Under the pieces are notes generated by a model. The model was given only the letters and a program-made list of their open reading frames with translations, did not search any database and was not told the DNA's origin. A stretch of 64,000 bases of DNA, from positions 1 to 64,000 of the forward strand of contig CDROCS010001101.1 in the NCBI GenBank assembly GCA_977020255.1, written 5' to 3'. The translations under genes were made by a program, and so were the position numbers. How positions within the stretch are numbered: position 1 is the stretch's first letter; each line of letters starts with the position of its first letter. The DNA is from Obrimoposthia wandeli. Taxonomy: Eukaryota. Below are positions 9,804-25,240 of this stretch, one piece after another.

Positions 9804-9830
9804 GAAACCCAGCATTTACGCTGGGTTTTC
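9804..9830 (+). terminator. Rho-independent terminator after the fibre cluster
   Basis: AAACCCAGC-loop-GCTGGGTTTT hairpin. Confidence 0.75.
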
Positions 9831-9887: not shown

Positions 9888-9916
9888 AAAAATCAAATGA
9901 GCAGATAGAGAATGTC

Positions 9917-10150: not shown

Positions 10151-10151
10151 G

Positions 10152-10538: not shown

Positions 10539-10552
10539 GCTTAAGAGGCGTT

Positions 10553-10897
10553 ATGATGGGCATATTTAGTAAGATTTTCGGTACTGACTCCGCGATTCAA
10601 TCGGGCTTAGATATGATTGCCAATGCCGGTGACGCCATTGTGTTTACCGATGAAGAAAAAGCACAGCAAAAAGTAACATTGCTCAAAGCGTATGAACCAT
10701 TTAAATTGATCCAACGTTTTATTGTGATGGTGTTTTGTGTGCCCTACGTGAGTTTGCACGCTGTGGTGATTGTAGGCCAATTACTTGGCATGGACTGGGG
10801 CGATATAAGCATCATGATTAATGATGCTTTTGGTTATCCAGTGCTGGCGGCTGTAGGCTTATACCTTACCGGAGGCGTAATACCCAGTCGTAAATAA
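10553..10897 (+). CDS. Putative holin (GTA-type 3TM holin-like)
   Basis: FTDEEKA motif followed by hydrophobic helices; after the endolysin. Confidence 0.6.
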   Translation: MMGIFSKIFGTDSAIQSGLDMIANAGDAIVFTDEEKAQQKVTLLKAYEPFKLIQRFIVMVFCVPYVSLHAVVIVGQLLGMDWGDISIMINDAFGYPVLAAVGLYLTGGVIPSRK

Positions 10898-10920
10898 TTC
10901 ACGAAAGGGGATTGATGAGC

Positions 10921-11892
10921 TTATACAGCCTCCGGCTCTAAGCTCACATAATCATTGATCGTCACAACCTCTATACCCACAAAATCATTCAACTCACAGA
11001 CCGATTCAAGCAGTGGCACTAATTCATTTTTGTAAAAGATACGGTCTATTTTATTTAAATCATTACTGGTACTAAACCCTTCACGTGCAATGCTCATTAA
11101 ATCTAACGGAATACGATGACTAGCAAGCACATCATTGGTCGTCATACTCTTAATATCTTTAAATGCATCCTTGGCTTCAATTTGTCCAATTGGGGTGAGT
11201 TCCGGCGGTTTGCCGTCCTTGCCTTTACCGTTAATGAATAGGTTTTTAAACGCCCCTAAACCCGCTTGTTGCTTGAGCTTATTCTGAATATCATCTTCTT
11301 GTGCTTGGGTTAGATTCGGATCGTTCATGTAAAGCAAGTAACCGGCATGCGCACCATTAAGGTAATACTTACGGCGAAACAGTGTTGCATCTTCATTAAG
11401 CCAGATTGAACTTAATGCGGCAATGTGTTGCGGCATACCGTATATTTCTTGGCAAATATCATATTCAGACAAATGAAATACTTGTCTCGCCTTGTAATCT
11501 ATTCTGCCATCATTATTGAACTCATTTGGTTTGTAAGTGTAAAGACCAATGGTTGCTTGCGCGCGCATATACAGCGCGGGTAAATGTTTGATGCAAACGA
11601 CATCTCCCAGCGCATTTCTAATGACGGATAAATAGCTATTACCAAACGTCAAAAAGTCATACAAAAAACGCTTAAAATCAGGTTTACTCAATAATGAGGA
11701 TAGCGTGACTGAACTGGCCGCCATGTTACGTTTTACATATAAGGCAGAGCCATGCATCGAATTGGCGCGGTTTGCTTTAGCCAATGTATCTAAAGGGATC
11801 GGCGGCTCATATAAGCCATCAATTAAAGCGACTTCCATATAGCTGAGAATATCACTGGCCATTACGCTTTGTGGAGTATCAAAAGTTATCAA
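10921..11892 (-). CDS. Portal protein (P2 gpQ/PBSX family)
   Basis: HGSALYVKRN, EYDICQEIYGMP, LFRRKYYLNGAHAG motifs; TTG start. Confidence 0.95.
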   Translation of the reverse strand: MITFDTPQSVMASDILSYMEVALIDGLYEPPIPLDTLAKANRANSMHGSALYVKRNMAASSVTLSSLLSKPDFKRFLYDFLTFGNSYLSVIRNALGDVVCIKHLPALYMRAQATIGLYTYKPNEFNNDGRIDYKARQVFHLSEYDICQEIYGMPQHIAALSSIWLNEDATLFRRKYYLNGAHAGYLLYMNDPNLTQAQEDDIQNKLKQQAGLGAFKNLFINGKGKDGKPPELTPIGQIEAKDAFKDIKSMTTNDVLASHRIPLDLMSIAREGFSTSNDLNKIDRIFYKNELVPLLESVCELNDFVGIEVVTINDYVSLEPEAV

Positions 11893-11903
11893 AATAGTCT
11901 CTC

Positions 11904-13670
11904 TTATAAGAATGAAATAGTGGTTGAGTCATCGCGTAAAATGTCGATTGGCTCCCAGTGTAAAACGTGCATTGCAGCCCAGGCTAAATCAGCATGAGAG
12001 CCTATTTTGTTACGTGCAGAAATAAAGGTGATTTGGTTGCTCTTTTCAGTCGTATGCTGTCGTATCATCAAGAAGGAATGCACTAAATCATCCCATTCAT
12101 CATCAAATTGCAAACGTCCTGCATTGATGATTTCACGGGCTTTGTAGGCCATCATGCGTTTTATCTCGGGTGAGTAATCCAGCATGGTCAGTCCTGGATA
12201 GAATTTTCTGACCAGTTCCGCGACCGCAGAGCCCACGCCGCCGACATCAATAGCCAAATAAACCACCGTGTATTTTTCACAAATACCTTGAATCGCGTTA
12301 GCCTGGTCTTCATAGCTTGAGCCTTTTAAACGAAGGCGTTCAATGATGCGAAATGATCCCCCTTTGATAGCCGGTTTTAAGGCAACAACTAACCCCGCAT
12401 CGTCAGAGCCTTCACCTTGCCCGCCGCCGCGCGGGTCATAACCCACTAATACCTCACGCTTACCAACAGGGTGAAGCGCATCAAAATCAACATCACTCCA
12501 TAATGATGTATCTGCTTTACAGGCAAGCAATGCCTTAATGCTAAAGAATGAAGATGCATCGTCTAAAAACACGCAGCGCAGTAAGTTATCAAATACTGTT
12601 TTATCCGGATATTTACGGCGTAGTTTATCCATGTTGAAAAAGTTAGCGCCACCGGCTATCGCATCATCCACGGTTATCATCTGACGGAAAATACCATCAA
12701 CGCCTAGCGCACCGGCTTTAAGTGCTTTATGGCTTATTTCAATTTTTAAATCTTTTCTGCCGGACCATTTTGAATATGCTTCATGGGCGGTACTCGATGG
12801 CGTCGATAAATACGTTGTGCGGTACTTGGATTGAATTGTCAGACCACCAATAAGATCGTCTAGCTCTTTGAACTTCGGGATCCAAAATGCTTCATCAATA
12901 TATAAATGGCCGTTAAAGCCTTGACCTGTGCGAGCGTTCGTTGATAAGAACGTTAAACTTGCGCCATTACTGAGTTGTAAATCATCTTTCCCTTTTAATT
13001 CCACATCGCCAAGTTCAAGTGCAAATTTACGAATGTAGTTTTTAAATATCTCACTTTGCTTACGCGACGCAGATAAAAACACCTGGTTATCGCCGGTTAA
13101 TATCGCATCTTCAAACGCTTCGAATGCAAAATAAAATGTTAAGCCAATTTGACGAGACTTAAGGTAAAAACGCATCTCGTTAATGTCGTTATTACACTTA
13201 TGATCGTGAATGTTTTTTTGATACTCAAAGAACGTCTTTTCTCTGAAATTCGCCAATATATCAGGCGTGATACCTGAGATATCATTTTTAGTTTTATTGT
13301 TTGGCCTGCCACGTCGCTGTTCTGAATGACTGTCGTTATGACTGGTTTTTTTCTTACGGCGCTCAGCTGTGTCGCGTTTGTGTTTTTGCTCAAGCAGTAT
13401 TTCGAGTTCTTTAAGTTGCGACTCGTGCTTTCTGTCAACCCAAAGCAGATACGCAATACGCTGTCGAAGCATTAATTCAACCGGTGCATCATCGCGCATC
13501 TGCTTCCAACCAAATTTAGATATCCATTGTTGGACTGTTCTTGGCGCAATCACTAGTGCATCGGCAATCTCGGCTGTTTTGTACTGGCGTAAGTAATACC
13601 CCAAGGCATGCGTTTGCATCTGGGTATAAATGGGTTTTTCTGGTGGCGTGGAGGTTAAGTTTATTTTCAT
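11904..13670 (-). CDS. Terminase large (ATPase) subunit, P2 gpP-like
   Basis: KSRQIG Walker A region, LYIDEAFW Walker B, STP motif, C-terminal HADLAWA; likely start ATG 13670. Confidence 0.95.
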   Translation of the reverse strand: MKINLTSTPPEKPIYTQMQTHALGYYLRQYKTAEIADALVIAPRTVQQWISKFGWKQMRDDAPVELMLRQRIAYLLWVDRKHESQLKELEILLEQKHKRDTAERRKKKTSHNDSHSEQRRGRPNNKTKNDISGITPDILANFREKTFFEYQKNIHDHKCNNDINEMRFYLKSRQIGLTFYFAFEAFEDAILTGDNQVFLSASRKQSEIFKNYIRKFALELGDVELKGKDDLQLSNGASLTFLSTNARTGQGFNGHLYIDEAFWIPKFKELDDLIGGLTIQSKYRTTYLSTPSSTAHEAYSKWSGRKDLKIEISHKALKAGALGVDGIFRQMITVDDAIAGGANFFNMDKLRRKYPDKTVFDNLLRCVFLDDASSFFSIKALLACKADTSLWSDVDFDALHPVGKREVLVGYDPRGGGQGEGSDDAGLVVALKPAIKGGSFRIIERLRLKGSSYEDQANAIQGICEKYTVVYLAIDVGGVGSAVAELVRKFYPGLTMLDYSPEIKRMMAYKAREIINAGRLQFDDEWDDLVHSFLMIRQHTTEKSNQITFISARNKIGSHADLAWAAMHVLHWEPIDILRDDSTTISFL

Positions 13671-13676
13671 CGTTAC

Positions 13677-13775
13677 AGTGTGCAATAACAACGTAAATAC
13701 CTCAGTAAATCAAGTTTCTACATGTCCTATCTAGAAATAGGTTCGGTATTAAAAGAGGTCATATTTCGGTAAATT
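13677..13775. promoter_or_regulatory. Putative divergent Ogr-dependent late promoters (terminase/scaffold)
   Basis: TTTCTA-N11-TAGAAA at 13715-13737; TAAATT 44 bp right of centre and CACACT (minus strand) 44 bp left, the same spacing as at 9827. Confidence 0.6.
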
Positions 13776-13804
13776 AAAATGACGCATTACAGGAGATTAA
13801 CGGC

Positions 13805-14644
13805 ATGTTTCAATCTGAACCCATTTGTATTTTGACCGCAGGCCCAACGGTAGATGGTCGCTTTATCGAGCAAAAAGTCATTGACGATATTGCCGAATTA
13901 TATGATCCGACAAAATACAACGCTCGCATTAATGAATCGCATTGGTCATGGGGCGCTAAGTTTGGCTCAGTGCTTTCTGTTGAGAAACGTGAAAACCAAT
14001 TATTTGCAGTATTAAAGCCAAATGCCTTGTTCTTAAGCACGATTGAAAAAGGACAGTTACTGCATACATCTTGTGAAATTGAATCCAATTTTGCTAAGAG
14101 CGGTCGAAGCTACTTAACGGGACTGGCGCTGACGGATGAACCGGCCTCATTGGGTACCACTGAAATTCACTTATCGGCCAAAGATAAAAGCGAAAATAAA
14201 GATAATGACAAAGTGAGTTTAAGCAGTGGTGCGACCGTCGGTGAAGGTGAATTATTAGCGCATCAGAAGCCAGGCGAACAAGAAGATATCAAGCTATTAG
14301 CTCGAATTAAAAAAATGTTTAGCTCAAACGCTGAGCCAACCGAACCACTCGAACAAGAAGAGAATGAAACCATGGATAAAGAGACAAAAGAATTACTCGC
14401 AACACAAACCGAAAATATCACTGCGTTAACCGCGGCGGTGACGCTGTTAGCCTCGACGACTAAACCTGTCATCGCCGTGCCAGAAACCGTTCCAATTGCA
14501 CCCGCAGTGCCAGAAAAACCGGAAGAGAGTGAAGTCTCAAAACTGTCAGCAAAGGTTGATGACTTGGTTGAAAAGCTCAACAAAATAACGGATGAAAACC
14601 CACGCGACCCAGCGGGCAAACAAGATGAATCGGGTTACTTGTAA
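13805..14644 (+). CDS. Capsid scaffolding protein, P2 gpO-like
   Basis: GPTVDGR, YNARIN.SH, YLTGLALTDEPASLGT. Confidence 0.93.
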   Translation: MFQSEPICILTAGPTVDGRFIEQKVIDDIAELYDPTKYNARINESHWSWGAKFGSVLSVEKRENQLFAVLKPNALFLSTIEKGQLLHTSCEIESNFAKSGRSYLTGLALTDEPASLGTTEIHLSAKDKSENKDNDKVSLSSGATVGEGELLAHQKPGEQEDIKLLARIKKMFSSNAEPTEPLEQEENETMDKETKELLATQTENITALTAAVTLLASTTKPVIAVPETVPIAPAVPEKPEESEVSKLSAKVDDLVEKLNKITDENPRDPAGKQDESGYL

Positions 14645-14703
14645 ATCATGGTGTATTTGGTTTCTCATTCTCTTTTTAATGTATTTATTATTGGATTTTA
14701 ACT

Positions 14704-15771
14704 ATGCAAGAAATAACAAAAATAGCGGTTGAAGGTTATAAAAAAGCCGTTGCAAAGCAAAACAATGTCGCTGATGTGACTGAAAAATTCAGTGTTACAC
14801 CAGCGGCGACACAAAAAATAATCGCCGTTATTCGTGAAAACAATTGGTTCCTGAGCAAAATTAATATTATGCCCGTAAGCAACCAAAAGGGTGAAGCGCT
14901 TGGTTTAGGTGTCTCGGGCATGATTGCCAGCCGTACCAATACTAAAGCGGGCTCAGAGCGTAAACCGAAAGCTGTGTATAGCATGACGCCGATGCCGTAT
15001 CTGTGTGAACAAGTAAACTTTGATTCACATATTCGTTACGATCAATTAGATGCATTCGCGCACTTAAATAACTTCAATAAAATCATTGCATCACAAACCC
15101 GTGAGCAAATTGATTTAAACAAAGTGACTATCGGTTTTCATGGTGAACGTAGCGAGCCTGATACAGATGCGAGCGCAAACCCAAATGGTGAAGATGTGTG
15201 TAAAGGTTGGTTGCAGGCTATTCGTGAACATAATTCTGATGCCATGCTCACCGAAGGTAAAACAGTGAGTGAAATTCGCATCGGTGAAGGTGAACCCGTC
15301 GGTGATGGGTCGGGCGCTGGTCTAGGTGATTTCATTAATCTTGATTTAGCCGTGATGAACGTCAAAGGTTTACTTGGTGATGAGTGTGCCAACGATTCTG
15401 ATTTAGTGGCGTTAATTGGCTCTGATTTACTGGCTTTTGATAAAGCCAAATTCTATGCCGCACATGGTAATACGCCCAGTGAAAAATCAAAGATTGAAGA
15501 TAAACAAGTGATCGGCACTTATGGTGGTTTGCCGTCTGCGTGTCCACCCTCATTCCCACCAACCGGCATTCTTGTTACTAGTTTCAAGAACCTGTCGATT
15601 TATATTCAAAAAGATTCGATTCGTCGTACTGCTGCAATCAAGAATGACCGACTTGATCAGCTTGAAAACTTTGAATCAATGAACATGGCTTACGTGGTCG
15701 AGCAGTTACCCAAAGCCGCCGCGCTTGAGTTTGATAACGTGAAGTTATGGATTGATGGCCAATGGGTTTAA
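14704..15771 (+). CDS. Major capsid protein, P2 gpN family
   Basis: FSVTP...Q, IGFHG, NPNGEDVCKGWLQ motifs. Confidence 0.95.
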   Translation: MQEITKIAVEGYKKAVAKQNNVADVTEKFSVTPAATQKIIAVIRENNWFLSKINIMPVSNQKGEALGLGVSGMIASRTNTKAGSERKPKAVYSMTPMPYLCEQVNFDSHIRYDQLDAFAHLNNFNKIIASQTREQIDLNKVTIGFHGERSEPDTDASANPNGEDVCKGWLQAIREHNSDAMLTEGKTVSEIRIGEGEPVGDGSGAGLGDFINLDLAVMNVKGLLGDECANDSDLVALIGSDLLAFDKAKFYAAHGNTPSEKSKIEDKQVIGTYGGLPSACPPSFPPTGILVTSFKNLSIYIQKDSIRRTAAIKNDRLDQLENFESMNMAYVVEQLPKAAALEFDNVKLWIDGQWV

Positions 15772-15887
15772 TACCCGAAAATAACGCCCTGTAAAATAAC
15801 ACCCCCCATGCAGGCTTTCGCTGCTTTATCAACACCGATTACGTGTTGCTATTAGCCAAGCGTTAAGCCTGCACCTAAGAGGTTTTT

Positions 15888-16337
15888 ATGCAATTTGTCG
15901 GAAATAAAGACGATATATATGGCTCGATACTGCCCGCAACAACGCTATATCCTGAGTTGAGCATTGCAGAGTTTCAGCGTGTGTTTCATTTTTTAAGTAA
16001 TGAAACAGAGGCTGGTATTTTGCACCACGCCAGGGTTGCTCGAATTACGGTTAATCAAGAGTTACTCGACACGGTAAAACCATTTAACGGCCTTGCTGGA
16101 CTATCACTCGAGCGTTTTGACGAAACTGAAACGGGTGACGTTTTATATAAACAGGCTGTTTTTGCGTTAACTGCAAATAACTTAGTTGAGAATCAGTTGA
16201 GTATGAATGCCACGGTTGAAGCGACAGATCGACAAGAAGCCATACAGGCCAAAGCTGACCATTGTTTAGTGCAGTATCGTCAAGCAATCGACTTGTTACT
16301 TAACGCCAAAGCAACTTATCGGTTTGAGATAGTTTAA
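15888..16337 (+). CDS. Head completion/stabilisation protein, P2 gpL-like
   Basis: YPELSIAEFQR...YKQAVFA; position after the capsid gene. Confidence 0.8.
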   Translation: MQFVGNKDDIYGSILPATTLYPELSIAEFQRVFHFLSNETEAGILHHARVARITVNQELLDTVKPFNGLAGLSLERFDETETGDVLYKQAVFALTANNLVENQLSMNATVEATDRQEAIQAKADHCLVQYRQAIDLLLNAKATYRFEIV

Positions 16338-16347
16338 GGGATAGCTT

Positions 16348-16821
16348 ATGGAAGCATTACAAAGTTTAACTGCGCTCTTTACTCAACATGTCACGGATGC
16401 AAAAAGCCTTGATGTGTGGGCTGAAGACGGTGAATTGATTTGCACCCAGGGCAGTTTTGTTGATGGTTTTGATATCGCATATACGGTGAACATTAATATG
16501 ACAGGCGTCGATGTTCAGCCGCATATATTGATGATGCACCTTGTTACCTGGTTCAATAAATACGATATGAACCGAGATGAGAAAGGCTTACCAACCCCAT
16601 CATTCGCGACAGAGCTGCTGGATAAAGGCAAGTGTGATATCAAATTGAAAATTGATATTCGAGAAAGCTATTCGTTGAATGAAAATGTCCTGGGCAATTG
16701 GCAGCAAAATGATACCCGCTATGAATGTATCAGTGATTTTCATCAAGCCGTAACCGAAGACGAGTTACCAACGCTTGAGCTTATTAAAGGACCTGAAGGT
16801 GATCTTCCGTTATGCAGTTAA
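16348..16821 (+). CDS. Tail completion protein, P2 gpR-like
   Basis: Synteny; Y.V.I...L..W pattern. Confidence 0.65.
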   Translation: MEALQSLTALFTQHVTDAKSLDVWAEDGELICTQGSFVDGFDIAYTVNINMTGVDVQPHILMMHLVTWFNKYDMNRDEKGLPTPSFATELLDKGKCDIKLKIDIRESYSLNENVLGNWQQNDTRYECISDFHQAVTEDELPTLELIKGPEGDLPLCS

Positions 16822-17351
16822 ATAGCCCTGAGCATTTAACGCATGCCATTCATGATTTGATATTAACCGGTCCTGATAAGTTTGATTTAAACCGGCGATT
16901 AGCAAACCGTACACGGCAAACATTTCGAGCGCAAATACGCGGGCAGCGTGATATTGACGATAACCCATATCAAAAACGAACAAGGCGCAAGATAAGCACG
17001 GTTTATAAAACGGGATCATGGGAAACCGCCAAGAATACGCAAAACAACAAAAACATGCTGGCAGGTTTTGGGCGAGCATTGAAGACGCGTGTTGATGAAA
17101 ATAGCTTTGAAGTTGGGCTAGCTGGTCTTGTGGGGAAAATGGCAAGGCTACATAACGAAGGACAAAATGTGTCATTCACGACGCGGGTTAACGGTTATTA
17201 CAATACCAGGACAAGCAGATGGGAAGGCGGGACAAAAGTAAAAGATAATTACCGAATGCCAAAGCGGACATTTATCGGTTGGACACCAGCACTTGAGCGC
17301 GATCTACTTGCAATGGTTGCTGAACAATTTTTACCAGGCGTGGAGAATTAA
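16812..17351 (+). CDS. Virion morphogenesis protein, P2 gpS-like
   Basis: IRGQRDIDDNPY..R, ARLHNEG, MPKRTFIG. Confidence 0.8.
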   Translation: MQLNSPEHLTHAIHDLILTGPDKFDLNRRLANRTRQTFRAQIRGQRDIDDNPYQKRTRRKISTVYKTGSWETAKNTQNNKNMLAGFGRALKTRVDENSFEVGLAGLVGKMARLHNEGQNVSFTTRVNGYYNTRTSRWEGGTKVKDNYRMPKRTFIGWTPALERDLLAMVAEQFLPGVEN

Positions 17352-17525
17352 ATGCGTAAGATTAAAGTTAAACCAAAGAAAGGGTTACTCGTACGTGATC
17401 CTCATACCCGTGAACCATTAAAAGCCGCGGGCGAACTTAAGCCCCGTAATACCTATTGGTTACGTCGAATTAACGATGCTGATGTACTACTGGTTACTGA
17501 ATCAAAAAAGGAAACTAAATCATGA
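17352..17525 (+). CDS. Small Mu-like pre-sheath protein (DUF2635-like, 57 aa; missed by the ORF track)
   Basis: MRKIKVKPKKGLLVRDPHTREPL...YWLRRINDADV; ATGA overlap with the sheath gene. Confidence 0.8.
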   Translation: MRKIKVKPKKGLLVRDPHTREPLKAAGELKPRNTYWLRRINDADVLLVTESKKETKS

Positions 17526-18655
17526 GCATTAGTTTTGCCGAAGTCCCGAACAATGCGAGAGTCCCAGGCGTTTATATTGAAATTGATAACAGCCTGGCAA
17601 ACAGCGCAGAAGCACAGCAAATTGTATTAGTGATTGGTAATGCGGTGACTAATGCACCTGTTGGGCCGAACACGGTCGTACTTTGCATGAATGAAGATTC
17701 TGCGCGTAAGCAGTTTGGTGAGTCAGATATCACATCGATGTTGAAGTATTTCACCAAGCAAAATGAAACCCTGCCTATTTATGCGGTGAGTGTTGATGCA
17801 AGCGATACGATGAGCGCCCTTGCTGCACTGGGGGATAAGCAATATCACCATATCATTTGTTCATTAAATGACGATACCACTGTGCGAGAACTTGGTGAGT
17901 TCTTAGATGCTCGTTATGAAGCGCTGCAAATGATCCCTGGTATCGCGTACTTACCCAAAAAAGGCACGCATGCGGAATTAGTGACTTATGGCGAAAAGTC
18001 TAATTGCCCATTAATTAGTTTTATCTCTATCAACGATGTGGGTGATTCGGGCAATAAACCATTGAGTGACGCCGAAGTCGTTGCAGCCTGGGCGGGACAA
18101 ATAGCGCCTTCACTTGCTAACGATCCTTGCCGACCACTACAAACGCTGAAAATGAAGGGTGTGTACTCAATCGCAAGCAGTGAGTTTGACTGGGCTGAAC
18201 GCAATTTACTGTTACATGAAGGGATGGGGACATATACGGTCACTGCGACTGGTGAAGTACAAGTTGAGCGACCAGTAACCGCCTATACAGAAAACGCAGC
18301 TGGTGTTGCTGATAACAGCTATTTAGATGTGATGACACCTGCAACCGCAATGTATTTTCGTGAAAAACAGCGTTCACTTATTCAAAGTAAATATGGTCGA
18401 CATAAATTAGCGAAAGACGGTACTAACTTTGCACCTGGTCAAGCGATTGCAACGCCAAGCATGATTAAGGGTGAACTACTTACGCTGTACAGATCGTTGG
18501 AATACAAAGGTATTGTTCAAGACTTTGAGGGTTACAAAAAATCATTGTTCGTTGAGTTAGATGACACAAATAAAGCCCGTATTAACTACCTCGATAGTCC
18601 GCAGTTTATCAACGGCCTGATCATCACTGCGGGTAAAATTCAATTTAGAAAGTAA
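17522..18655 (+). CDS. Tail sheath protein (Mu gpL-like, short form)
   Basis: MSISFAEVPNNARVPGVYIEIDNS, DPCRPLQTL motifs. Confidence 0.9.
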   Translation: MSISFAEVPNNARVPGVYIEIDNSLANSAEAQQIVLVIGNAVTNAPVGPNTVVLCMNEDSARKQFGESDITSMLKYFTKQNETLPIYAVSVDASDTMSALAALGDKQYHHIICSLNDDTTVRELGEFLDARYEALQMIPGIAYLPKKGTHAELVTYGEKSNCPLISFISINDVGDSGNKPLSDAEVVAAWAGQIAPSLANDPCRPLQTLKMKGVYSIASSEFDWAERNLLLHEGMGTYTVTATGEVQVERPVTAYTENAAGVADNSYLDVMTPATAMYFREKQRSLIQSKYGRHKLAKDGTNFAPGQAIATPSMIKGELLTLYRSLEYKGIVQDFEGYKKSLFVELDDTNKARINYLDSPQFINGLIITAGKIQFRK

Positions 18656-18683
18656 CTCAATTATTGGGTTTTGGGAGTAACTA

Positions 18684-19049
18684 ATGAGTACAAAAATAAC
18701 CAGCCGTGGTTTTTTAGATGCCGGTTCTTTAGGTCGATTACCGACGAAAGAAGGCGCCACTGTTAACTTTGGTAATATGAAACGTGATCCCGTTCTTGGT
18801 GATGCGGGGGTGCTTGGATACAGTGAAGTATTTGAAGGTGCGCCCAGTATTAAGGCCACGATTGTTCATGCAACCACCACCGATGAAACCGCTATCAAAA
18901 ATTTCACCGGTGAAAATATTACCCTCAATACCAACAGTGGTAAAAGCTACACCTTGATGGATGCTTGGGTTGGTGAAGCACTTGAACTAACCGTTAAAGA
19001 TGGTCAGTTAGACGTGATGTTCTTTGGTACTGAACTCATACCACAATAG
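18684..19049 (+). CDS. Tail tube protein (Mu gpM-like)
   Basis: Follows the sheath gene; 121 aa; G..GY.E....P.I pattern. Confidence 0.8.
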   Translation: MSTKITSRGFLDAGSLGRLPTKEGATVNFGNMKRDPVLGDAGVLGYSEVFEGAPSIKATIVHATTTDETAIKNFTGENITLNTNSGKSYTLMDAWVGEALELTVKDGQLDVMFFGTELIPQ

Positions 19050-19066
19050 TATCGAAGGGGGTTGTC

Positions 19067-19771
19067 ATGTTATCGATATTAATAAAGCGAAAAGCGCGAG
19101 CAAGAAAAAAACAAGAAAATGAAGATAAGCCAATTCAAAGCGACATATTATCAATTAAAAGTAGCGCTAAGCAACGCGTAACACTTGAAGATAAGCCCTG
19201 GCCTGAAGTGCAAAATACCTTAAAAAGGGATTTAGAGTATTCAAGAACCTTGGCTGGCTCGCAAGAAAAAATACCGTTTAAAAAAGAACTGATTAAAAAA
19301 TATAAACCATTAGTCACCAAGTTACTTGCAACCCATGAAAATTTAGATGGGTTGGATGTCGTGTGGTGGTTCTATCAATGGCAGATTGATTGTGGCCTGT
19401 TGCCGTTAATGCACGACGCTTTTAAAGCGGCAGTGCTAAAAGGTTTAGATACACCGGCTAATTGGAAGTCGAATGGACAAACGGCGTATTGCGATATTGT
19501 TTTTAAATATTCACATGAAGCACATAAAGCGAATATCGAGTTTAATACCGCGTATTTAAGCGGTGCAATCAATGATTTGTTAGCGGGTCAGATTGCCACT
19601 AATCCACCGCTTAAAGTTAAAATGTTCCGTTTAGCGGGCGATTTATTATTACAAGCGGGTAACGCTGAAGACGCATTAACCTTGTATAACGTTGTCATGA
19701 AAATAGACCCGCAAAAAGGCGGTCGTAAAACCAAAGTGAAAGAATTAAAGGAAGCATTAGGCCATGAGTAA
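19067..19771 (+). CDS. Terminase small/endonuclease subunit, P2 gpM-like (displaced)
   Basis: LKRDL...SQEKIPFKKELIKKY...WQIDCG, helical C-terminus ending GRKTK..LKEAL. Confidence 0.75.
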   Translation: MLSILIKRKARARKKQENEDKPIQSDILSIKSSAKQRVTLEDKPWPEVQNTLKRDLEYSRTLAGSQEKIPFKKELIKKYKPLVTKLLATHENLDGLDVVWWFYQWQIDCGLLPLMHDAFKAAVLKGLDTPANWKSNGQTAYCDIVFKYSHEAHKANIEFNTAYLSGAINDLLAGQIATNPPLKVKMFRLAGDLLLQAGNAEDALTLYNVVMKIDPQKGGRKTKVKELKEALGHE

Positions 19772-20054
19772 AGCATTAGAGTTAACGTCAACAAATTCAA
19801 AAATGGTCGCGCTCGCGTCACCAATGACAGTGGGCGGTGAAGAAGTTAACGAAATTGAACTGCGTAAACCTAACGCAGGCAATTTACGTGGATTAAATTT
19901 AATCAGTGTTGTTGAAATGCACTTTGATGCTGCGATGGTATTACTCCCCCGTATATCGAAATTAAATGAACGTGACATTTTGAATATGGAGCCAGAAAAT
20001 TTTGCGCCATTGATGACGGAAATAGCGGGTTTTTTCGTGGATATGAAGCACTAG
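19764..20054 (+). CDS. Tail assembly chaperone (gpE/Mu gp41-like)
   Basis: EIELRKPNAGNLRGLNL motif; between tube and tape measure genes. Confidence 0.85.
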   Translation: MSKALELTSTNSKMVALASPMTVGGEEVNEIELRKPNAGNLRGLNLISVVEMHFDAAMVLLPRISKLNERDILNMEPENFAPLMTEIAGFFVDMKH

Positions 20055-20229: not shown

Positions 20230-22116
20230 ATGAAAATGAATCTATCCGTGGTGATGGGCATAGTAGATAAAACCAGTAAACCACTGCAAGGCATGGCAAG
20301 TGATTCTGATTATTACGCCAAGAAAATAAAAAAAATACAAAGCGCACAATCAGATGATTCCAGTGCATTAACCATGATTGCCTCTTACCAGAAAATTCAA
20401 AAAGAATTAGATAAAAATGCATTGGAAGGTGAAGAGGCAACAGAAAAACTTGCCAAGCTAAAGGCGCAAATGGCGGCTACAAAAGAGCCAAGCGCGGCAC
20501 TGACTAATCGCCTTGCTAAGCAAACTGAAAAAGTAGCCAAACTGTCTGCTAACAATGATAAATACGAGAACAGTCTTCACCAAACAAGCAAGCAGATGAA
20601 GAAAGCAGGCGTTAATGTTCGTCATCTTGACAGTGAGTTTGATCGCCTGTCGCAGAGCCAGCGCGATAATGCCAAACAGGTTGAAGCTGTCAGTAATAAA
20701 TATAAACGATTACGCACAGCGATGGCACCGGTTCAAAGACTGAGTCAGTCAATTAAAATGCCTAACCTTAAATCGGCGGCATTGGGTAAAGGGGCGGCTA
20801 TATTAGGCGGGTTAAGCCTGGGCGGATTATTTAGTCAGATGAATAGCGCGGCAGCTGAAATGGATAAACTGTCTAAAGCGGCGAATAACTTAAATATGCC
20901 GGTTGAAGAACTGCAAGCGATGCAATCTCAAGCGGAGCATGCGGGGGTGAGTTCGGACACGATGAGCGCCGCTATGGTGCGGTTTACCAAGCGGTTGGGT
21001 GTACTGCAAACTACGGGCAAGGGCGCGATGGGTTCGTTTCTGCAGAAGGGAAAGAATCCACTATATAGAGAGCTAAAGGGCGCGAAGGATACACAGCAAG
21101 CTTATGACAGTGTGCTTGAGTCATTTTCAAAGTTAAAGACTAACCAGGAACAGATGGCTTTTGCTGATGCTGCATTCGGGCAAGATGGACGGAAAATGTT
21201 GATCATGCTACGTGACGGCACGAAAGGCTTAACCCTTGCGCGTAAAGAATTCAATGAAACGGGTGGAGGAGTAACATCGGAAGATGCCGCCAAAGCCGAA
21301 GCGTACAATGATGCCATGCAAAAAGTGCAGGAAAGCATTAGCTCGGTGAAGTTTACCGTATTAGCACCGGTGATGATGAAGCTCACTGAGGTATTTACAG
21401 TATTTTCCAATAAATTTAAGGATGTAAAATGGCGCACCGATTTAATTGAAAAAATCAAAGCCGCAGTTAACGCGCTTTACGATGGATTTAAGTTTTTAGG
21501 CAACATCATTTTATTTATATCTCAGAATTTTAAAGGCATGATTGCAGTGCTCGCTATCTTCAAAATAGCGATGATTGCGATTAACGCAGCCGTTATGGCA
21601 AACCCAATCGGCCTCATGGTGGCTGCAATCGGTGCAGCTATTATTGCTATTATTTATTTAGTCGACAGATTCATTGGTTTTGATGTGATCTTAAAAGCGG
21701 TAGGTGAAACCATAGGTTGGGTATGGGACGGTATCAAGGCATTGATAAACATGTTGCCGGATGCTTTAATCCCCGATGGTTGGAAAGCCTCTGCAGAAGC
21801 GGCTGGGGGGGAAGTCGATAAGCTAAATCAAAAACTAAATACGATTAAAGACAAAAATGCCAAGTTAGGTATCACCACAGATGAAACGATTAATCAGACC
21901 ACAACAAGCAAATCCAATGAACAACGAAAACAAGGCTTGTCAGGGAATATTATCCCCATGTCAAAAGCAACGCCGTTAACAAACCAAACAATAAAAAGCC
22001 AAGCCGAAGTTGCCGTTACCATTAAATCAGAAAAGCCAATCAGCATAGACAAAGCAACCAGTGAGAAGGGGACTAATTTAAACCTGAATTTAGGTAATAT
22101 GATGATGAGTTATTGA
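20230..22116 (+). CDS. Tail tape measure protein
   Basis: 628 aa; Ala/Lys-rich helical; C-terminal ANPIGL..AAI hydrophobic repeats. Confidence 0.93.
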   Translation: MKMNLSVVMGIVDKTSKPLQGMASDSDYYAKKIKKIQSAQSDDSSALTMIASYQKIQKELDKNALEGEEATEKLAKLKAQMAATKEPSAALTNRLAKQTEKVAKLSANNDKYENSLHQTSKQMKKAGVNVRHLDSEFDRLSQSQRDNAKQVEAVSNKYKRLRTAMAPVQRLSQSIKMPNLKSAALGKGAAILGGLSLGGLFSQMNSAAAEMDKLSKAANNLNMPVEELQAMQSQAEHAGVSSDTMSAAMVRFTKRLGVLQTTGKGAMGSFLQKGKNPLYRELKGAKDTQQAYDSVLESFSKLKTNQEQMAFADAAFGQDGRKMLIMLRDGTKGLTLARKEFNETGGGVTSEDAAKAEAYNDAMQKVQESISSVKFTVLAPVMMKLTEVFTVFSNKFKDVKWRTDLIEKIKAAVNALYDGFKFLGNIILFISQNFKGMIAVLAIFKIAMIAINAAVMANPIGLMVAAIGAAIIAIIYLVDRFIGFDVILKAVGETIGWVWDGIKALINMLPDALIPDGWKASAEAAGGEVDKLNQKLNTIKDKNAKLGITTDETINQTTTSKSNEQRKQGLSGNIIPMSKATPLTNQTIKSQAEVAVTIKSEKPISIDKATSEKGTNLNLNLGNMMMSY

Positions 22117-22231
22117 GTGGCAATGTAGACGCTCAATAAGGTATGGCCCTATCCATATATATCCAATACAACCCATCCTGTGCCGCCAAAGTGAAGCCTT
22201 TTGAAATAATAAATTATGATGCTATAAGATA

Positions 22232-22501
22232 TTATTTGTTTCTAGCATTAAGTCTCAGTTTGTCAGGTAAAAGTCTTGTTTTCCTTTCATATAAAATAAA
22301 AATATAATAAAATCAGTTGTATATGAAGTGTTGTAAATAATTAACAAGACTTTAATAATAAATAACAGGACTGCACACTTTCCCAGAACAGATTTAAATG
22401 TCAGATTGATGTTTTATCTTATTTTATTTTTCATTTGATTAGCCGTTATTGACTAGGGTGAATGGATTTGGGGAATCGAGACGTCCTGCTATACAAATCT
22501 T
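22232..22501 (+). repeat. Conserved ~270-bp leader, copy 1 (attI-like, ends ATACAAAT-CTT)
   Basis: Alignable with 23791-24060; shared exact 26-mer AATAAATAACAGGACTGCACACTTTC (22357-22382). Confidence 0.85.
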
Positions 22502-22519
22502 ATATTTAGTAGGATGCAC

Positions 22520-23035
22520 ATGAGCGTTGACATTGATAAGTATAAATGTTTATACGAATACGAAAAAAATCTATTTGAAGAAGAAAGCGGAAGATATAGG
22601 CGTCTTGAAGACAAAGCTATGAAGTATCTAAGCGCAACAACTTTGGCAATCGGAGCTTATCTATTTCTAGTTCGTGGAATAATAGAAGAGCTTATTCCGC
22701 CGAATAATTATATTGAGTGGTTTGTTTTAATATCTGTGGGTTTGACTTTTATAGCATTTATTTCTTCATGGAGTCTTATTTTTAGAGCTATAAAACTAAC
22801 TGATATCGTTAAAATGCCTTCTGATGAAAAAACGATTAACTACTTTAAAGATAATGAGCTTGATACTGTTTACTTAGGTTTAAGTAAACAGTATTCAAAT
22901 GGTATTAAAGTCATAGAAAAAAACTATGAAAATAAGCTGAAACTTGTTCGTATGGCTTATTCCGACATTATGTTTACTGGTTGGTTGTTAGTCGTTTCAA
23001 TTATATTTATATCAATACTAAAATGGAGTACTTAA
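22520..23035 (+). CDS. Cassette A membrane protein, 3 predicted TM helices (Pycsar TM-effector-like topology)
   Basis: N-helix RLEDKAMKYL, TM1, TM2, loop, ENKLKLVRMA, TM3; AT-rich; start 22514 or 22520. Confidence 0.65.
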   Translation: MSVDIDKYKCLYEYEKNLFEEESGRYRRLEDKAMKYLSATTLAIGAYLFLVRGIIEELIPPNNYIEWFVLISVGLTFIAFISSWSLIFRAIKLTDIVKMPSDEKTINYFKDNELDTVYLGLSKQYSNGIKVIEKNYENKLKLVRMAYSDIMFTGWLLVVSIIFISILKWST

Positions 23036-23036
23036 A

Positions 23037-23165
23037 ATGAGTGAAAAAGAACAAGAAAATATCAAACCCGCTGTGCCTGTCGAAGTAGATGCGCCTGAAT
23101 TGGTTATCTGTACAGAAAGCTATAAACCACCACAACGTGATAACAAAACACAGTTGAAAGACTAA
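23037..23165 (+). CDS. 42-aa Pro/Glu-rich peptide in cassette A (missed by the ORF track)
   Basis: GGAG 8 nt before the ATG; MSEKEQENIKPAVPVEVDAPELVICTESYKPPQRDNKTQLKD; stop abuts the attC. Confidence 0.6.
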   Translation: MSEKEQENIKPAVPVEVDAPELVICTESYKPPQRDNKTQLKD

Positions 23166-23255
23166 ATAAAACAAGTTGCTCAAACGGAAAAATAACAGTG
23201 ATCATCGTTACGCGATTCTAGCCAATCATGATTTCCGATTATTAAGGTGTTACTT
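23166..23255 (+). other. Degenerate attC site of cassette A
   Basis: ATAAAAC-AAGTTGCTCAAACGGAAAAAT...ATTTCCGATTATTAAGGT-GTTA; partial stem, damaged R box. Confidence 0.55.
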
Positions 23256-23594
23256 GATAAATAGATGTTTCAGGCTTATTTTAGCTGAAACATTGATTCC
23301 CCAATTTAGTGCAAAATTATCCCACCTCTTTTAGTCCGTTATAGCTAAGTTAACATACATAAATGAGTCCTTGAGTAGGTATCTTACGTGAGTGTGCTTT
23401 TGGTTATGCGTGTTACATACAATATAAACAGAGCCTAAATCGCTTAATTGTTCCTCGCGCACTCTGCCGCCACAGCTTTACAAGAATGTATTGATAAATA
23501 ATTGATTTGCTAATGCTTTATGTTTTAAGGTAAAGGGGTAACCCTACCCCGTAATAAAGGGGTTTAATCAACCTCATGTATCTGAACTCTATTA

Positions 23595-23632
23595 AACATA
23601 ATGATAGATTGAACAAAGGCGATTAAATGGCG
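23595..23632 (+). repeat. Conserved 38-bp tail element, copy 1
   Basis: 32/38 identical to 24868-24905. Confidence 0.8.
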
Positions 23633-23660
23633 GTCAACTGGTGACTATGCACGATTAAAT

Positions 23661-23723
23661 GCGGCTATATGCGGCTATATGAGGCTATGTGCGGCTATAT
23701 GCGGCTATATGCGGCTATATGCG
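23661..23723 (+). repeat. 10-bp minisatellite (GCGGCTATAT) x6
   Basis: Five exact units and one variant GAGGCTATGT. Confidence 0.95.
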
Positions 23724-23790
23724 TATAGCAAGCTATATGCGTAGCGAGAATAATTTAATAAACATTGAAAAACAATGATTTCATACAGGG

Positions 23791-24060
23791 TTATTTGTTT
23801 ATTTCTCAGCTAAGTCACAGTTTGTAATGAAATAGTCTTTTTTTCCTTGTCCTAAATTAAAAAGGCTAATAAAATCAGTGAGCATATTTAGTCCTTGTTA
23901 ATAATTAACAGGACTTAAAAAATAAATAACAGGACTGCACACTTTCTCAACATAGGTTTTAATGTCAGATTGGCATTTTATCTTATCTTTCATTTGATTA
24001 GTTGTTATTGACTAGAGTGAATAGATTTGTGGAATCGAAACGTCCTATTATACAAATGTT
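23791..24060 (+). repeat. Conserved ~270-bp leader, copy 2 (attI-like, ends ATACAAAT-GTT)
   Basis: Alignable with 22232-22501; exact 26-mer at 23921-23946. Confidence 0.85.
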
Positions 24061-24845
24061 AGCTGTATCACATTCCACTTTGTATAGTCGTGAACTTTAA
24101 AGAGAGTAAATTCAATATTTTATGGTAAATTAGATTACATGAAAATTGAGTTAGTTAACTCTCACGACGTAAGAAGAACACTTCTCAGTTTTGTATCATT
24201 GGACTTCTATCAAAACAGCTTTAAAAGTATTACGTGGTAGAAATGTGTTTAGTAAAATGGATGCAGGTAAACATGCAAACTTTCATATCCAGCCAAATCC
24301 GAAAGACTTCGAGAAGGCAAGTGAGATATGTTTAAAGTTCAAGTTTTCTGGGAGTCACAAACTTATGTTTGGAGATACTTTTGATACCCCTAATCCACCT
24401 CCCAATTCATCTGATTCTATCTATCACTTGATCACATCGTCATGGGAGCATTATATTTCTGGCGATAGGGCAATTGGAAATATTAAACATTGGCAGAGCA
24501 ATGTGTACCCTAACACTGATGGGTTGGTTTTTTTAGGCATAGAGACGTTTGATGATAAACTTTCTTGGTTTTTTACAATTGATACAAACAAAAAAATTAA
24601 TGAGCCCAAATCTTATTTTGGCTTAATGAACTATAAAAGCTTTAAAGAGTACGAAGAAAAACTTTATTATAAAAATTTAAAGTTGGATATTGAAGAAGCT
24701 GAAATATTTTCAAAAAACAAAAAGTTTGTTGTCATACCATGTTAGTAAAACAGCTAACAAGTCACTAAAGCAGGACAAATAACCGTTGGTTTTTGCTCCT
24801 GCGTCGCTTATTTTAACCAACTATCATTTGCCTCTTAGTGAGGCG
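24058..24845 (+). mobile_element. Integron-type gene cassette B
   Basis: Begins G/TTAGCT (24058) and ends in an attC whose left box AGCTAAC (24752) is the exact reverse complement. Confidence 0.8.
24139..24745 (+). pseudogene. Cassette B hypothetical protein, possibly frameshifted
   Basis: ATG 24139 opens a 33-codon frame ending at TAG 24240; a long overlapping +1 frame (24191-24745) has no ATG until about codon 23. Confidence 0.45.
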
Positions 24846-24851
24846 TTAATT
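24752..24851 (+). other. attC site (intact) of cassette B
   Basis: AGCTAAC...GTTAATT with nested complements TCACTAA/TTAGTGA, CAAAT/ATTTG and GTTGGTT/AACCAAC. Confidence 0.88.
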
Positions 24852-24867
24852 CATTTCTCTTAGCTCT

Positions 24868-24905
24868 AACATAATGACAGACTGATCTGAGGCGATTAAA
24901 TGACG
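24868..24905 (+). repeat. Conserved 38-bp tail element, copy 2
   Basis: AACATAATGACAGACTGATCTGAGGCGATTAAATGACG. Confidence 0.8.
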
Positions 24906-25034
24906 ACAACCACATGACGGTAGATACGAAGAAGGACTAATTCAATAAGTTACCCAATATCAGTTTAAAAAATTGGTACTAGATTCAAATAATAAGCGCA
25001 TCAATGAGGTATTTTTTTAGCTAATTAACGTACA

Positions 25035-25100
25035 TGTGGTCATAAAGTGGACGTATATTAACAATAAAGCATTAAATTCAACAACTTAAATATAATGTGG
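25035..25100 (+). other. Candidate attR region (arm-type repeats + IHF-like site)
   Basis: TGTGGTCA (25035) and AGTGGACG (25046) resemble the P2 Int arm consensus TGTGGACA; ATTCAACAACTTA (25076) is one mismatch from WATCAANNNNTTR. Confidence 0.4.
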
Positions 25101-25123
25101 AACCACCTTCGGGTGGTTTTTTT
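25101..25123 (+). terminator. Rho-independent terminator
   Basis: AACCACC-TTCG-GGTGGTT-TTTTT. Confidence 0.85.
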
Positions 25124-25240
25124 ATTTGTGCATTTTATGGTTTAACGTCTATATTATTAACAGTGGGATTGAAAATATTAACGTGTTTTTACGTTAATAT
25201 GACCATCAGAATTAATACTGTATTCTTTGGAGTAGTTATA

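What the first reader, a model, noticed from the sequence alone, without database searches (positions are those of the whole stretch)
22232..24905. Two tandem integrase-less mini-integron units (leader/attI-like site + one cassette + conserved tail) at the prophage end
Seen in sequence: a ~270-bp non-coding leader occurs twice, 1559 bp apart, with an exact shared 26-mer and several AACA(G/A)GAC boxes in direct and inverted orientation. Homology stops exactly at ATACAAAT-(G/C)TT. Each copy is followed by a different AT-rich ORF set ending in an attC-like hairpin, then by a shared 38-bp element. Established: integron cassettes insert at G/TT of attI and carry an attC, and intI normally lies next to attI. 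Inference: these are self-contained single-cassette capture platforms (attI plus probable promoter) with no integrase, loaded in trans by a host integron integrase and possibly carried as prophage cargo. This would let a temperate phage sample the host cassette pool, for example defence genes. I know of no described system with this repeated architecture, but I cannot search the literature.
Basis: partly seen in the sequence, partly recalled or inferred. Interest (0 to 1): 0.88.

Follow-up and report, generated by a model that had tools for sequence, protein, structure and literature searches.

The report
Integrase-less integron platforms beside a prophage
Two tandem copies of a 290-bp integron-type insertion site (attI-like, with a probable promoter but no integron integrase) each carry genuine integron gene cassettes just beyond the end of a P2-like prophage of a Moritella bacterium, and the same platform is the standard anti-phage-defence cargo slot next to the integrase gene of related P2-like phages.

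Summary
A ~290-bp non-coding leader occurs twice (22216-22502, 23776-24061; ~85% identity). Homology ends at ATACAAAT-(C/G)TTA.

What follows each leader is true integron cassettes. Unit 1 holds two and unit 2 holds one. Their attC sites fit a covariance model that also detects attCs of a bona fide integron. Each cassette's first bases are the reverse complement of its own attC's 5' box.

I found 18 leader copies in 16 loci. In at least 10, homology ends at the same GTTA and unrelated cassettes follow, so the leader behaves as an attI.

No integron integrase lies in the window or beside any copy. In seven distinct phage contigs the neighbour is a P2-type phage integrase, which is not an IntI. 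Cargo there includes Septu, PDC-S06, a GmrSD-like protein and Abi proteins.

Unit 1 also sits, 94% identical, in Moritella viscosa chromosomes without a prophage. The window's copies therefore probably lie just outside the prophage.

A close precedent exists: Shewanella phage M16-3 has an integron plus an integrase-less array with its own attI. Which integrase loads the platform is unknown. Verdict: a new variant of a known kind, of moderately high interest.

The parts
20230..22116 (+). Tail tape-measure gene, the last gene of the P2-like prophage (context)
   Evidence: PHROG 8125, E 9e-134. The other structural genes lie at 1275-20054.
22117..22145 (.). Probable prophage/chromosome junction (attR region). 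Homology to the prophage-free M. viscosa locus starts at about 22141-22146.
   Evidence: Inferred; the left prophage end is outside the window.
22146..22215 (+). Upstream extension conserved with leader-1-type copies (L004, L007, L011, L012, M. viscosa)
22216..22502 (+). Leader 1: integrase-less attI-like platform. Its junction base is C instead of G (C|TT at 22499-22501).
22286..22313 (+). Promoter-like site in leader 1 (TTCATA-16-TAAAAT), at the position of the conserved TA(G/A)AAT box
   Evidence: Prediction only.
22500..23249 (+). Cassette 1a. It holds a 173-aa protein with three hydrophobic stretches (22514-23035) and a 42-aa ORF (23037-23165).
   Evidence: The cassette start is complementary to the 5' box of its attC. 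The gene pair is conserved in M. viscosa and Sulfurimonas. No Pfam or PADLOC hit.
23164..23257 (+). attC of cassette 1a
   Evidence: Covariance model R1, 62.5 bits, E 2.7e-12
23250..23562 (+). Cassette 1b, non-coding, with a degenerate attC 3' end (hairpin followed by GGGG|TTTAAT)
   Evidence: The same sequence follows another cassette's attC in L012 and M. viscosa. Its own attC is not detected by R1.
23563..23638 (+). Tail 1: shared sequence that begins at the G|TT of the last attC
23645..23731 (+). Seven tandem 10-bp repeats (GCGGCTATAT type) between the units
23776..24061 (+). Leader 2: integrase-less attI-like platform, junction G|TT at 24058-24060
23847..23875 (+). Promoter-like site in leader 2 (TTGTCC-17-TAAAAT)
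   Evidence: Prediction only.
24059..24845 (+). Cassette 2
   Evidence: GTTAGCTGT at 24057-24065 is the exact reverse complement of ACAGCTAAC at 24750-24758.
24139..24745 (+). Cassette-2 gene of unknown function. It appears broken by one frameshift relative to its closest relative.
   Evidence: 82% identity to P0001 over 183 aa, with the first residues encoded in another frame. The homologue P0003 is a cassette in a Pseudoalteromonas array.
24750..24853 (+). attC of cassette 2
   Evidence: Covariance model R1, 88.1 bits, E 7e-19. Fold z-score -3.3.
24846..24910 (+). Tail 2

Best explanation
Each unit is an integron platform that has lost, or never had, its integrase gene. It consists of a ~290-bp leader, one or more cassettes, and a conserved tail.

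The leader carries a conserved promoter-like element about 190 bp upstream of its end. It also carries a palindrome and repeated AACAGGAC-type boxes. It ends in an attI-type crossover point (G|TTA).

Circular attC-bearing cassettes were inserted at that point by an integron-type (IntI) tyrosine recombinase supplied in trans. Inserted genes point away from the leader, so the leader's promoter can transcribe them.

The shared tail is what lay to the right of the crossover before insertion. This implies that an ancestral leader-plus-tail unit was duplicated and each copy was then loaded separately.

The platform family belongs to P2-like phages of Moritella and its relatives. There it fills the slot between the C repressor operon and the phage integrase gene and carries anti-phage defence cassettes. 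The two copies in the window probably sit on the chromosomal side of the prophage's right attachment site. They are either relics of earlier prophages or chromosomal copies.

Shown: the cassette anatomy, the constant boundary, the absence of intI, the phage association and the defence cargo. Inferred: the promoter function, the identity of the recombinase, and the origin of the window's copies.
For: (1) Constant boundary. I found 18 leader copies in 16 loci. In 10 of the 15 copies with an intact 3' end, homology stops at ...TATACAAAT-GTT(A/G). The other five have variant junctions. Unrelated sequence follows in each copy.

(2) Cassette anatomy. In nine copies the first 11 nt after the boundary are the reverse complement, with 0-2 mismatches, of a box lying exactly at the 5' edge of a downstream attC. 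This includes both window units, L005 (11/11), L006 and L016.

(3) Genuine attC sites. Twelve sites align as one family. Compensatory changes occur in 11 of 15 predicted pairs. The model built from them detects attCs in the IntI-bearing integron of Shewanella phage M16-3 (73.6 bits) and in a Pseudoalteromonas cassette array (78 and 69 bits). In that array the homologue of the window's cassette-2 protein is followed by an attC.

(4) Diversity at one point. Different attC types are joined to the same point: the ~100-nt family, and another type on a Septu cassette in L016.

(5) Same slot as a complete integron. In M16-3 the slot between the C repressor and the prophage end holds intI, a LexA box, a ~300-bp intergenic region, attI and cassettes. 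That phage also has a second, integrase-less array with a 151-bp copy of the attI region.

(6) The GTTA cleavage point is the established attI insertion point (bioRxiv 10.1101/2024.07.02.601686).

(7) A sigma-70-like element with a nearly invariant TA(G/A)AAT box lies at the same leader position in all copies.

(8) Both tails begin at the G|TT of the last attC.
Against: - No IntI gene is present in the 64-kb window or in any leader locus. None of the 120 best IntI homologues is named Moritella. The supposed trans-acting enzyme is therefore unidentified.
- Similarity of the leader to the Shewanella intI-attI region is confined to the LexA-box end (26 nt at 88%, E 0.014 in a small database). At the crossover end it is not above background.
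- Unit 1 has C rather than G at the crossover, in M. viscosa as well, so it may be inactive.
- About 290 bp are conserved, far more than a minimal attI needs, so the leader has further functions that I could not define.
- The promoter scan as a whole finds no more sites than in shuffled sequence.
- IntegronFinder itself could not be run.
Confidence: 0.75

Rival explanations
1. The leader is only the promoter and regulatory region of a phage 'moron' or defence hotspot. Cargo is exchanged by homologous recombination between conserved flanks (the leader on one side, the C-repressor operon on the other). The attC sites are passive passengers of cassettes that were picked up once.
For: - The slot upstream of int also holds divergently oriented cargo in relatives without the leader (L015, L019, L020).
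- The whole 290 bp is conserved and includes a promoter-like box.
- Some cargo is large and multi-gene (4.3 kb in L014).
Against: - Homologous exchange would not put the boundary at the same G|TT in ten copies.
- It would not make each cargo's first bases complementary to its own attC 5' box.
- It would not explain the tail starting at the G|TT of the last attC.
Confidence: 0.1
2. The leader is an arm of the attachment site (attP, attL or attR) of the neighbouring P2-type integrase, with the AACAGGAC boxes as arm-type binding sites. The tandem units would be integrase-less elements accreted at that site, in the manner of CIMEs.
For: - The leader lies 200-250 bp from a P2-type int with an arm-binding N-terminus in L002, L006, L014, L016 and L017, and further from one in L013 and L018.
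- The boxes are repeated in direct and inverted orientation.
- Units occur in tandem in the window and in L017.
- The window's prophage junction lies about 70 bp upstream of leader 1.
Against: - Int, leader, cargo, C repressor and cox are contiguous inside prophages. Host genes lie beyond the 3' end of int (MCP and MYG1 in L018; L,D-transpeptidase in L019 and L021). The phage att site is therefore on the other side of int.
- What follows the leader is cassettes, not host DNA.
- A 92%-identical Int occurs without any leader (L015).
- Leaders occur without this Int (M. viscosa, L009, L001).
Confidence: 0.05
3. The leader encodes a small RNA or a structured 5' leader RNA, and this accounts for its conservation. 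The insertion boundary would be incidental.
For: - 290 bp of non-coding sequence is strongly conserved.
- A 24-26-bp palindrome is kept, with partly compensatory changes in its arms, in 14 of 18 copies.
Against: - There is no Rfam match.
- RNAalifold gives a covariation term of -0.01 and only 3 of 22 pairs with compensatory change.
- The palindrome is deleted in three copies.
- This reading does not explain the cassette anatomy, although it is compatible with the best explanation as an added function.
Confidence: 0.05

Closest known systems
Shewanella phage vB_SspM_M16-3 (MZ568829): complete integron plus a CALIN with its own attI, in a P2-like (Peduoviridae) prophage (Qi et al. 2023, PMC9892861)
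   Same: - Both involve a P2-like prophage.
- The cassette array lies on the strand opposite the C repressor, between that gene and the prophage end.
- The region upstream of the crossover is ~300 bp, with a palindromic box and a repeated half-box near the crossover.
- A second array in M16-3 is headed by an integrase-less copy of the attI region (151 bp, 87%).
- Its attCs are detected by the same model.
   Different: - M16-3 has an IntI gene next to its main attI (394 bits against TIGR02249). The Moritella-type platforms never do, and a P2-type phage integrase sits there instead.
- The leader's sequence is essentially unrelated in its middle part.
- Here the platform is a recurrent family of 16 loci.
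- The window's copies are probably outside the prophage.
[quoted passage not shown]
   Same: Two model-detected attC sites lie 1.5 kb apart, with no integron integrase in 64 kb.
   Different: CALINs are defined by attC sites only and usually have no attI. Here each short array is headed by a conserved attI-like platform with a probable promoter, and the platform is repeated in tandem.
Sedentary chromosomal and mobile integrons whose cassettes encode anti-phage defence (bioRxiv 10.1101/2024.07.02.601686 and 10.1101/2024.07.02.601719)
   Same: Compact defence systems are carried as cassettes inserted at a GTTA site downstream of a promoter. Septu, PDC-S06, a GmrSD-like protein, Abi_alpha and HEPN proteins occur in relatives.
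   Different: Those systems have IntI in cis and long arrays on chromosomes or plasmids. These have one to three cassettes, no IntI, and sit in the lysogeny module of a phage.
Defence hotspots of P2-like phages and P4-like satellites (Rousset et al. 2022; cited from my own knowledge, not read here)
   Same: Variable anti-phage cargo sits at a fixed position of a P2-like genome.
   Different: As I recall, those hotspots are bounded by conserved phage genes, with no site-specific insertion signature. Here the cargo is bounded by an attI-type junction and by attC sites.
Cassette insertion at non-classical genomic sites (attG; Loot et al. 2024; cited from my own knowledge, not read here)
   Same: Integron cassettes are found outside a complete integron, joined at a GTT.
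   Different: attG sites are, as I recall, scattered and minimal. Here a conserved 290-bp platform recurs with many different cassettes.

Membership tests
Integron gene cassette | An attC site with imperfect inverted terminal boxes (5' ...YAAC, 3' GTTR...) and a paired inner L box | tested here: met
   Twelve sites aligned. The L''/L' pairs and the central stem show compensatory changes in 11 of 15 pairs. Window sites score 88 and 62 bits.
Integron gene cassette | The cassette's first bases (the TT... half of R') are complementary to the 5' box of its own attC | tested here: met
   Both window units and seven other loci show this, with 0-2 mismatches in 11 nt, located exactly at the attC 5' edge.
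Integron gene cassette | The attC is related to attCs of an integron that has an IntI | tested here: met
   Model R1 hits the M16-3 integron array (73.6 bits, plus weaker hits in register between ORFs) and a Pseudoalteromonas array (78 and 69 bits).
Integron gene cassette | Recombination by an integron integrase | not testable with these tools
Complete integron (intI + attI + Pc + cassettes) | An integron integrase gene adjacent to attI and divergent from it | tested here: not met
   There is no IntI in the window (tblastn; NCBIfam). The neighbouring integrases of L014 and L017 score 70 and 56 bits against TIGR02249 (cut-off 265), whereas M16-3 IntI scores 394 bits.
attI site | A fixed crossover at G|TT(A), with unrelated cassettes to its right in different copies | tested here: met
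   10 of 15 copies with an intact 3' end have GTT; the others have CTT, TTT or GTA variants. The downstream sequence is different in each. The GTTA cleavage site is taken from the paper read.
attI site | Accessory integrase-binding repeats upstream of the crossover | tested here: inconclusive
   Repeated AACAGGAC-type boxes and a palindrome are present. Their layout parallels that of M16-3. Binding is untested.
attI site | Sequence homology to a described attI | tested here: inconclusive
   There is a 26-nt match at the LexA-box end (88%, E 0.014). Similarity at the crossover end is not above background (10/16; 49 of 1341 control sites score as well).
attI site | A cassette promoter (Pc) upstream | tested here: inconclusive
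   A sigma-70-like site is conserved at 22286-22313 and 23847-23875, with a near-invariant -10 box across 18 copies. No transcript data were available.
CALIN | At least two attC sites close together and no integron integrase nearby | tested here: met
   attC sites lie at 23164-23257 and 24750-24853, and there is no IntI in 64 kb. IntegronFinder itself was not run.
Phage attachment site of the P2-type integrase | The site separates phage from host DNA in the prophage | tested here: not met
   Int, leader, cargo and C repressor are contiguous. Host genes lie beyond the 3' end of int.

The most novel reading that the evidence does not exclude
The P2-family phage integrase encoded beside the platform, divergent from it and with its own LexA box, carries out the attI x attC capture itself, rather than an IntI. 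That would be an independently evolved, phage-borne integron-like system. My evidence argues against this reading but does not exclude it. The Int is a typical arm-binding P2-type enzyme. A 92%-identical Int occurs without the leader. Leaders occur without the Int.
Probability: 0.06. Interest if true: 0.95.

Novelty: new variant of a known kind. Interest (0 to 1): 0.62.

Why it matters
It would mean that a group of temperate P2-like phages carries a ready-made integron docking site without paying for an integrase. Whatever IntI is present in a host could then load the phage's lysogeny module with cassettes from the bacterial cassette pool. Many of these cassettes are compact anti-phage systems, such as Septu and PDC-S06 here.

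That links two topics that are usually treated apart: defence hotspots of phages, and integrons as stores of defence genes. It also gives a concrete route by which cassettes leave sedentary integrons and travel between species.

The tandem, integrase-less units left in the chromosome show that such slots can outlive their phage.

For genome annotation, the 290-bp leader is a simple marker for finding these cargo slots.

Tried and rejected
- Rfam search of the region and of seven related loci found nothing relevant.
- tRNA and tmRNA search near the leaders found nothing relevant.
- RNAalifold on 18 leaders showed no covariation support for an RNA.
- BLAST of the whole region against 50,697 phage records gave no match.
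- Exact-protein look-ups for three window proteins found nothing, so the window's genome is not in that collection and the sequence left of the window could not be fetched.
- My first home-made attC scan was too strict and found almost nothing. I replaced it with an HMM and then a covariance model.
- The tails were not found in any other locus.
- A search for IntI in viral contigs gave only two distant relatives. The 120 best IntI homologues include none named Moritella. Literature searches for a Moritella integron were uninformative.
- I first took the short 58-nt hairpin element after the AAC box in L005 and L006 for a short attC. Comparison with M. viscosa L069 shows that it is the end of an IS91-family element inserted at that box.
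- I considered and rejected the leader as attP, and the neighbouring Int as an IntI.

I also mused about what a stop codon in one phage integrase might once have been. None of this was entered into a tool, saved or used as evidence, and I stopped when I noticed it.
Full report
**1. The observation**

Window 22216-22502 and 23776-24061 are two copies of a non-coding leader of about 287 bp. They share ~85% column identity at offsets of 1559-1564 bp. They share an exact 26-mer, and its 22-nt core occurs twice in the window against none in 100 shuffles. Homology ends at ATACAAAT-CTTA in copy 1 and ATACAAAT-GTTA in copy 2. The 38-bp 'tail' is real. It is part of a 65-75-bp similarity that begins exactly at the G|TT ending the last attC of each unit (23563-23638 and 24846-24910). 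Seven tandem 10-bp repeats lie between the units.

**2. The surroundings**

- Positions 1275-22116 encode the structural genes of a P2-like myovirus: an Ogr/Delta zinc finger, hub, baseplate, fibres, portal, terminase, scaffold, capsid, sheath, tube and tape measure. The tape-measure gene (20230-22116) is the last phage gene.
- From about 25100 onward the genes are chromosomal: a STAS protein, polysaccharide export genes, narQ/narL-like genes and moaA.
- No tyrosine recombinase of any kind lies near the units. A tblastn search with a true integron integrase finds nothing in the 64 kb.

**3. What follows the leaders is integron cassettes**

In unit 2, GTTAGCTGT at 24057-24065 is the exact reverse complement of ACAGCTAAC at 24750-24758. 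That box opens a ~100-nt element ending in GAGGC-GTTAA. This is the anatomy of a cassette and its attC.

I collected twelve such elements from the window and related loci. They align as one family. RNAalifold finds the inner (L) pairing and a central stem, with compensatory changes in 11 of 15 pairs.

A covariance model built from them scores the window sites at 88 bits (24750-24853) and 62 bits (23164-23257). The same model detects attC sites in three independent places, all in the correct orientation and between ORFs:
- the IntI-bearing integron of Shewanella phage M16-3 (73.6 bits, plus weaker hits);
- that phage's second array;
- a Pseudoalteromonas cassette array (78 and 69 bits).

In the Pseudoalteromonas array, the homologue of the window's cassette-2 protein (P0003) is itself followed by an attC. 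It lies among typical cassette genes such as Cass2.

Unit 1 holds two cassettes:
- Cassette 1a (22500-23249) encodes a 173-aa protein with three hydrophobic stretches and a 42-aa ORF.
- Cassette 1b (23250-23562) is non-coding. The same sequence follows a different cassette's attC in L012 and in M. viscosa.

The cassette-2 gene appears to carry one frameshift relative to its closest relative.

**4. The leader behaves as an attI**

Pattern scans found the leader in one genome (Moritella sp. JT01), one viral contig and eleven metagenome contigs. A search with the neighbouring integrase added further phage contigs. BLAST then gave 18 copies in 16 loci.

- In 10 of the 15 copies with an intact 3' end, homology ends at ...TATACAAAT-GTT(A/G). 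The other five end in CTT, TTT or GTA variants. A different sequence follows each copy.
- In nine copies the first 11 nt after the boundary are the reverse complement, with 0-2 mismatches, of a box lying exactly at the 5' edge of a downstream attC. Examples are 11/11 in L005 and 10/11 in L006 and L016.
- More than one attC type is joined to the same point. One is a distinct type on a two-gene Septu cassette in L016.

This is the behaviour of an attI. Insertion between the G and the T of GTTA is the established reaction.

Both tails start at the G|TT of the last attC. They are therefore best read as the sequence that lay right of the crossover before cassettes arrived. On that reading, an ancestral leader-plus-tail unit was duplicated and each copy was then loaded separately.

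**5. No integron integrase: a P2-type phage integrase is the neighbour**

In L002, L006, L014, L016 and L017 the leader lies 200-250 bp upstream of a tyrosine integrase with an arm-binding N-terminus, and is divergent from it. L013 and L018 also carry this integrase, with a further cargo unit between it and the leader. L010 is the same contig as L002.

These proteins score only 70 and 56 bits against the integron-integrase model TIGR02249, whose cut-off is 265. M16-3 IntI scores 394 bits.

The gene order in these contigs is cox, C repressor, a small ORF, then on the other strand attC-cargo-leader, then int. Beyond the 3' end of int lie host genes. Int is therefore the terminal prophage gene, and the leader is not the phage attachment site. 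The int of L002 is interrupted by one stop codon.

Two observations argue against a dedicated partnership between this Int and the leader:
- A 92%-identical Int occurs without a leader (L015).
- Leaders occur without this Int (M. viscosa, L009, L001).

**6. Cargo**

Cargo next to leaders includes:
- Septu PtuA/PtuB (E 1e-164 and 2e-98);
- PDC-S06 (E 0);
- a GmrSD/HEC-06-like protein together with an NA37 protein;
- an AAA_15 ATPase, Abi_alpha, DUF2971, Endonuclease I and a HEPN protein;
- DUF3800 and DUF7946/7947 proteins.

The window's own cassette proteins match no Pfam or PADLOC family. The 173-aa/42-aa pair recurs as a pair in Sulfurimonas at 65% identity.

**7. The closest precedent**

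Qi et al. 2023 (PMC9892861) describe Shewanella phage vB_SspM_M16-3, a member of the Peduoviridae. It has a complete integron plus an integrase-less array, each headed by the Shewanella-type attI.

In the record the integron sits in the same slot: C repressor, cassettes on the other strand, a ~300-bp intergenic region with a LexA box, then intI at the prophage end. The second array carries a 151-bp, 87%-identical copy of the attI region.

The Moritella-type leader has the same length and layout: a LexA-like box at the far end, a palindrome about 130-150 bp from the crossover, and a half-box next to the crossover. Sequence similarity, however, is limited to 26 nt at the LexA-box end. At the crossover it is not above background.

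**8. Where the window's copies sit**

Window 22146-23405 is 94% identical to a locus in several Moritella viscosa strains. That locus lies about 130 nt downstream of gcvTHP, with no phage genes within 10 kb and with the same C|TT junction. L012 is the same locus in another relative.

Homology to these starts at about 22141-22146, which is 25-30 bp after the tape-measure stop codon. The simplest reading is that the prophage's right attachment junction lies at 22117-22146 and the two units are on the chromosomal side.

They may be what remains of the int-proximal cargo slots of earlier prophages. In support, L012 has a P2-type int facing the end of its array, and L017 has two tandem units inside a phage. 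This origin is inferred.

The window's organism is a Moritella related to, but not the same as, M. viscosa.

**9. Mechanism and confidence**

- Shown: the cassette anatomy, the constant crossover point, the lack of intI, the association with phages, and the defence cargo.
- Inferred: a trans-acting IntI loads the platform, and the conserved sigma-70-like element drives the cassettes. That element lies at 22286-22313 and 23847-23875, with its -10 box nearly invariant in 18 copies.
- Unresolved: which IntI acts, and whether Moritella has one.
- Unit 1's C at the crossover suggests that it is frozen.
- I found no support for an RNA gene in the leader.

**10. Limits and slips**

- IntegronFinder could not be run.
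- The sequence left of the window could not be fetched.

Noticed in passing
L069 10654-12940 (M. viscosa); also L005 ~1584-1640 and L006 ~6011-5953: An IS91-family element is inserted exactly after the AAC of an attC 5' box, splitting the attC of cassette 1a in one M. viscosa strain. It carries a Y2 transposase and a XerC/D-like recombinase with 28% identity to IntI. The same terminal hairpin follows the AAC box in L005 and L006, so the element seems to target attC sites.
   Followed up: partly
L002 ~6255-6240; L015, L019, L020 and L022 just upstream of position 8001: The P2-type integrase genes are preceded by a good LexA box (CTGT-N8-ACAG) 10-45 nt upstream of the start codon. This suggests SOS-controlled int expression in this phage group.
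   Followed up: no
window 23645-23731: Seven tandem copies of a 10-bp unit (GCGGCTATAT type) lie between the two units. Their function is unknown; iteron-like or slippage-prone sequence is possible.
   Followed up: no
window 22514-23165; L076 6001-6649: The 173-aa membrane protein and the 42/43-aa ORF are conserved as a pair in M. viscosa (98%) and in a Sulfurimonas genome (65%), where a 305-aa gene follows. This looks like a small two-gene module of unknown function spread by horizontal transfer.
   Followed up: partly
window 24139-24745: The cassette-2 gene seems to be broken by one frameshift relative to its closest relative P0001.
   Followed up: partly
L001 7198-7225 and ~5660-5690 (Moritella sp. 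JT01): A partial leader lies after a deaminase-toxin-like gene and ends in a variant junction. An inverted copy of its last ~26 bp lies 1.5 kb downstream, bracketing a phasin-like gene and a lipoprotein gene. This is unexplained.
   Followed up: no
L011 ~440-500: In this copy the 3' end of the leader is replaced by an attC-like ...AGGCGTTAT end, as if attI and attC sequences had been joined.
   Followed up: no
window 186-686, 1275-1631, 19067-19771: The prophage gene order is unusual for a P2-like phage. A terminase-large-subunit fragment lies at the window start. ogr lies ahead of the hub and baseplate genes. A small-terminase homologue lies between the tube gene and gpE. No lysogeny or replication genes are in the window.
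   Followed up: partly
window 38008-41641 and 42096-45739: The ORF sizes suggest a tandem duplication of a three-gene block (828 aa, 163/180 aa and 190 aa). I saw this in the ORF list only.
   Followed up: no
window 25056-25126: A strong intrinsic terminator (25099-25120, + strand) has no obvious upstream gene. A weak, sub-threshold Rfam Phe-leader match overlaps it.
   Followed up: no
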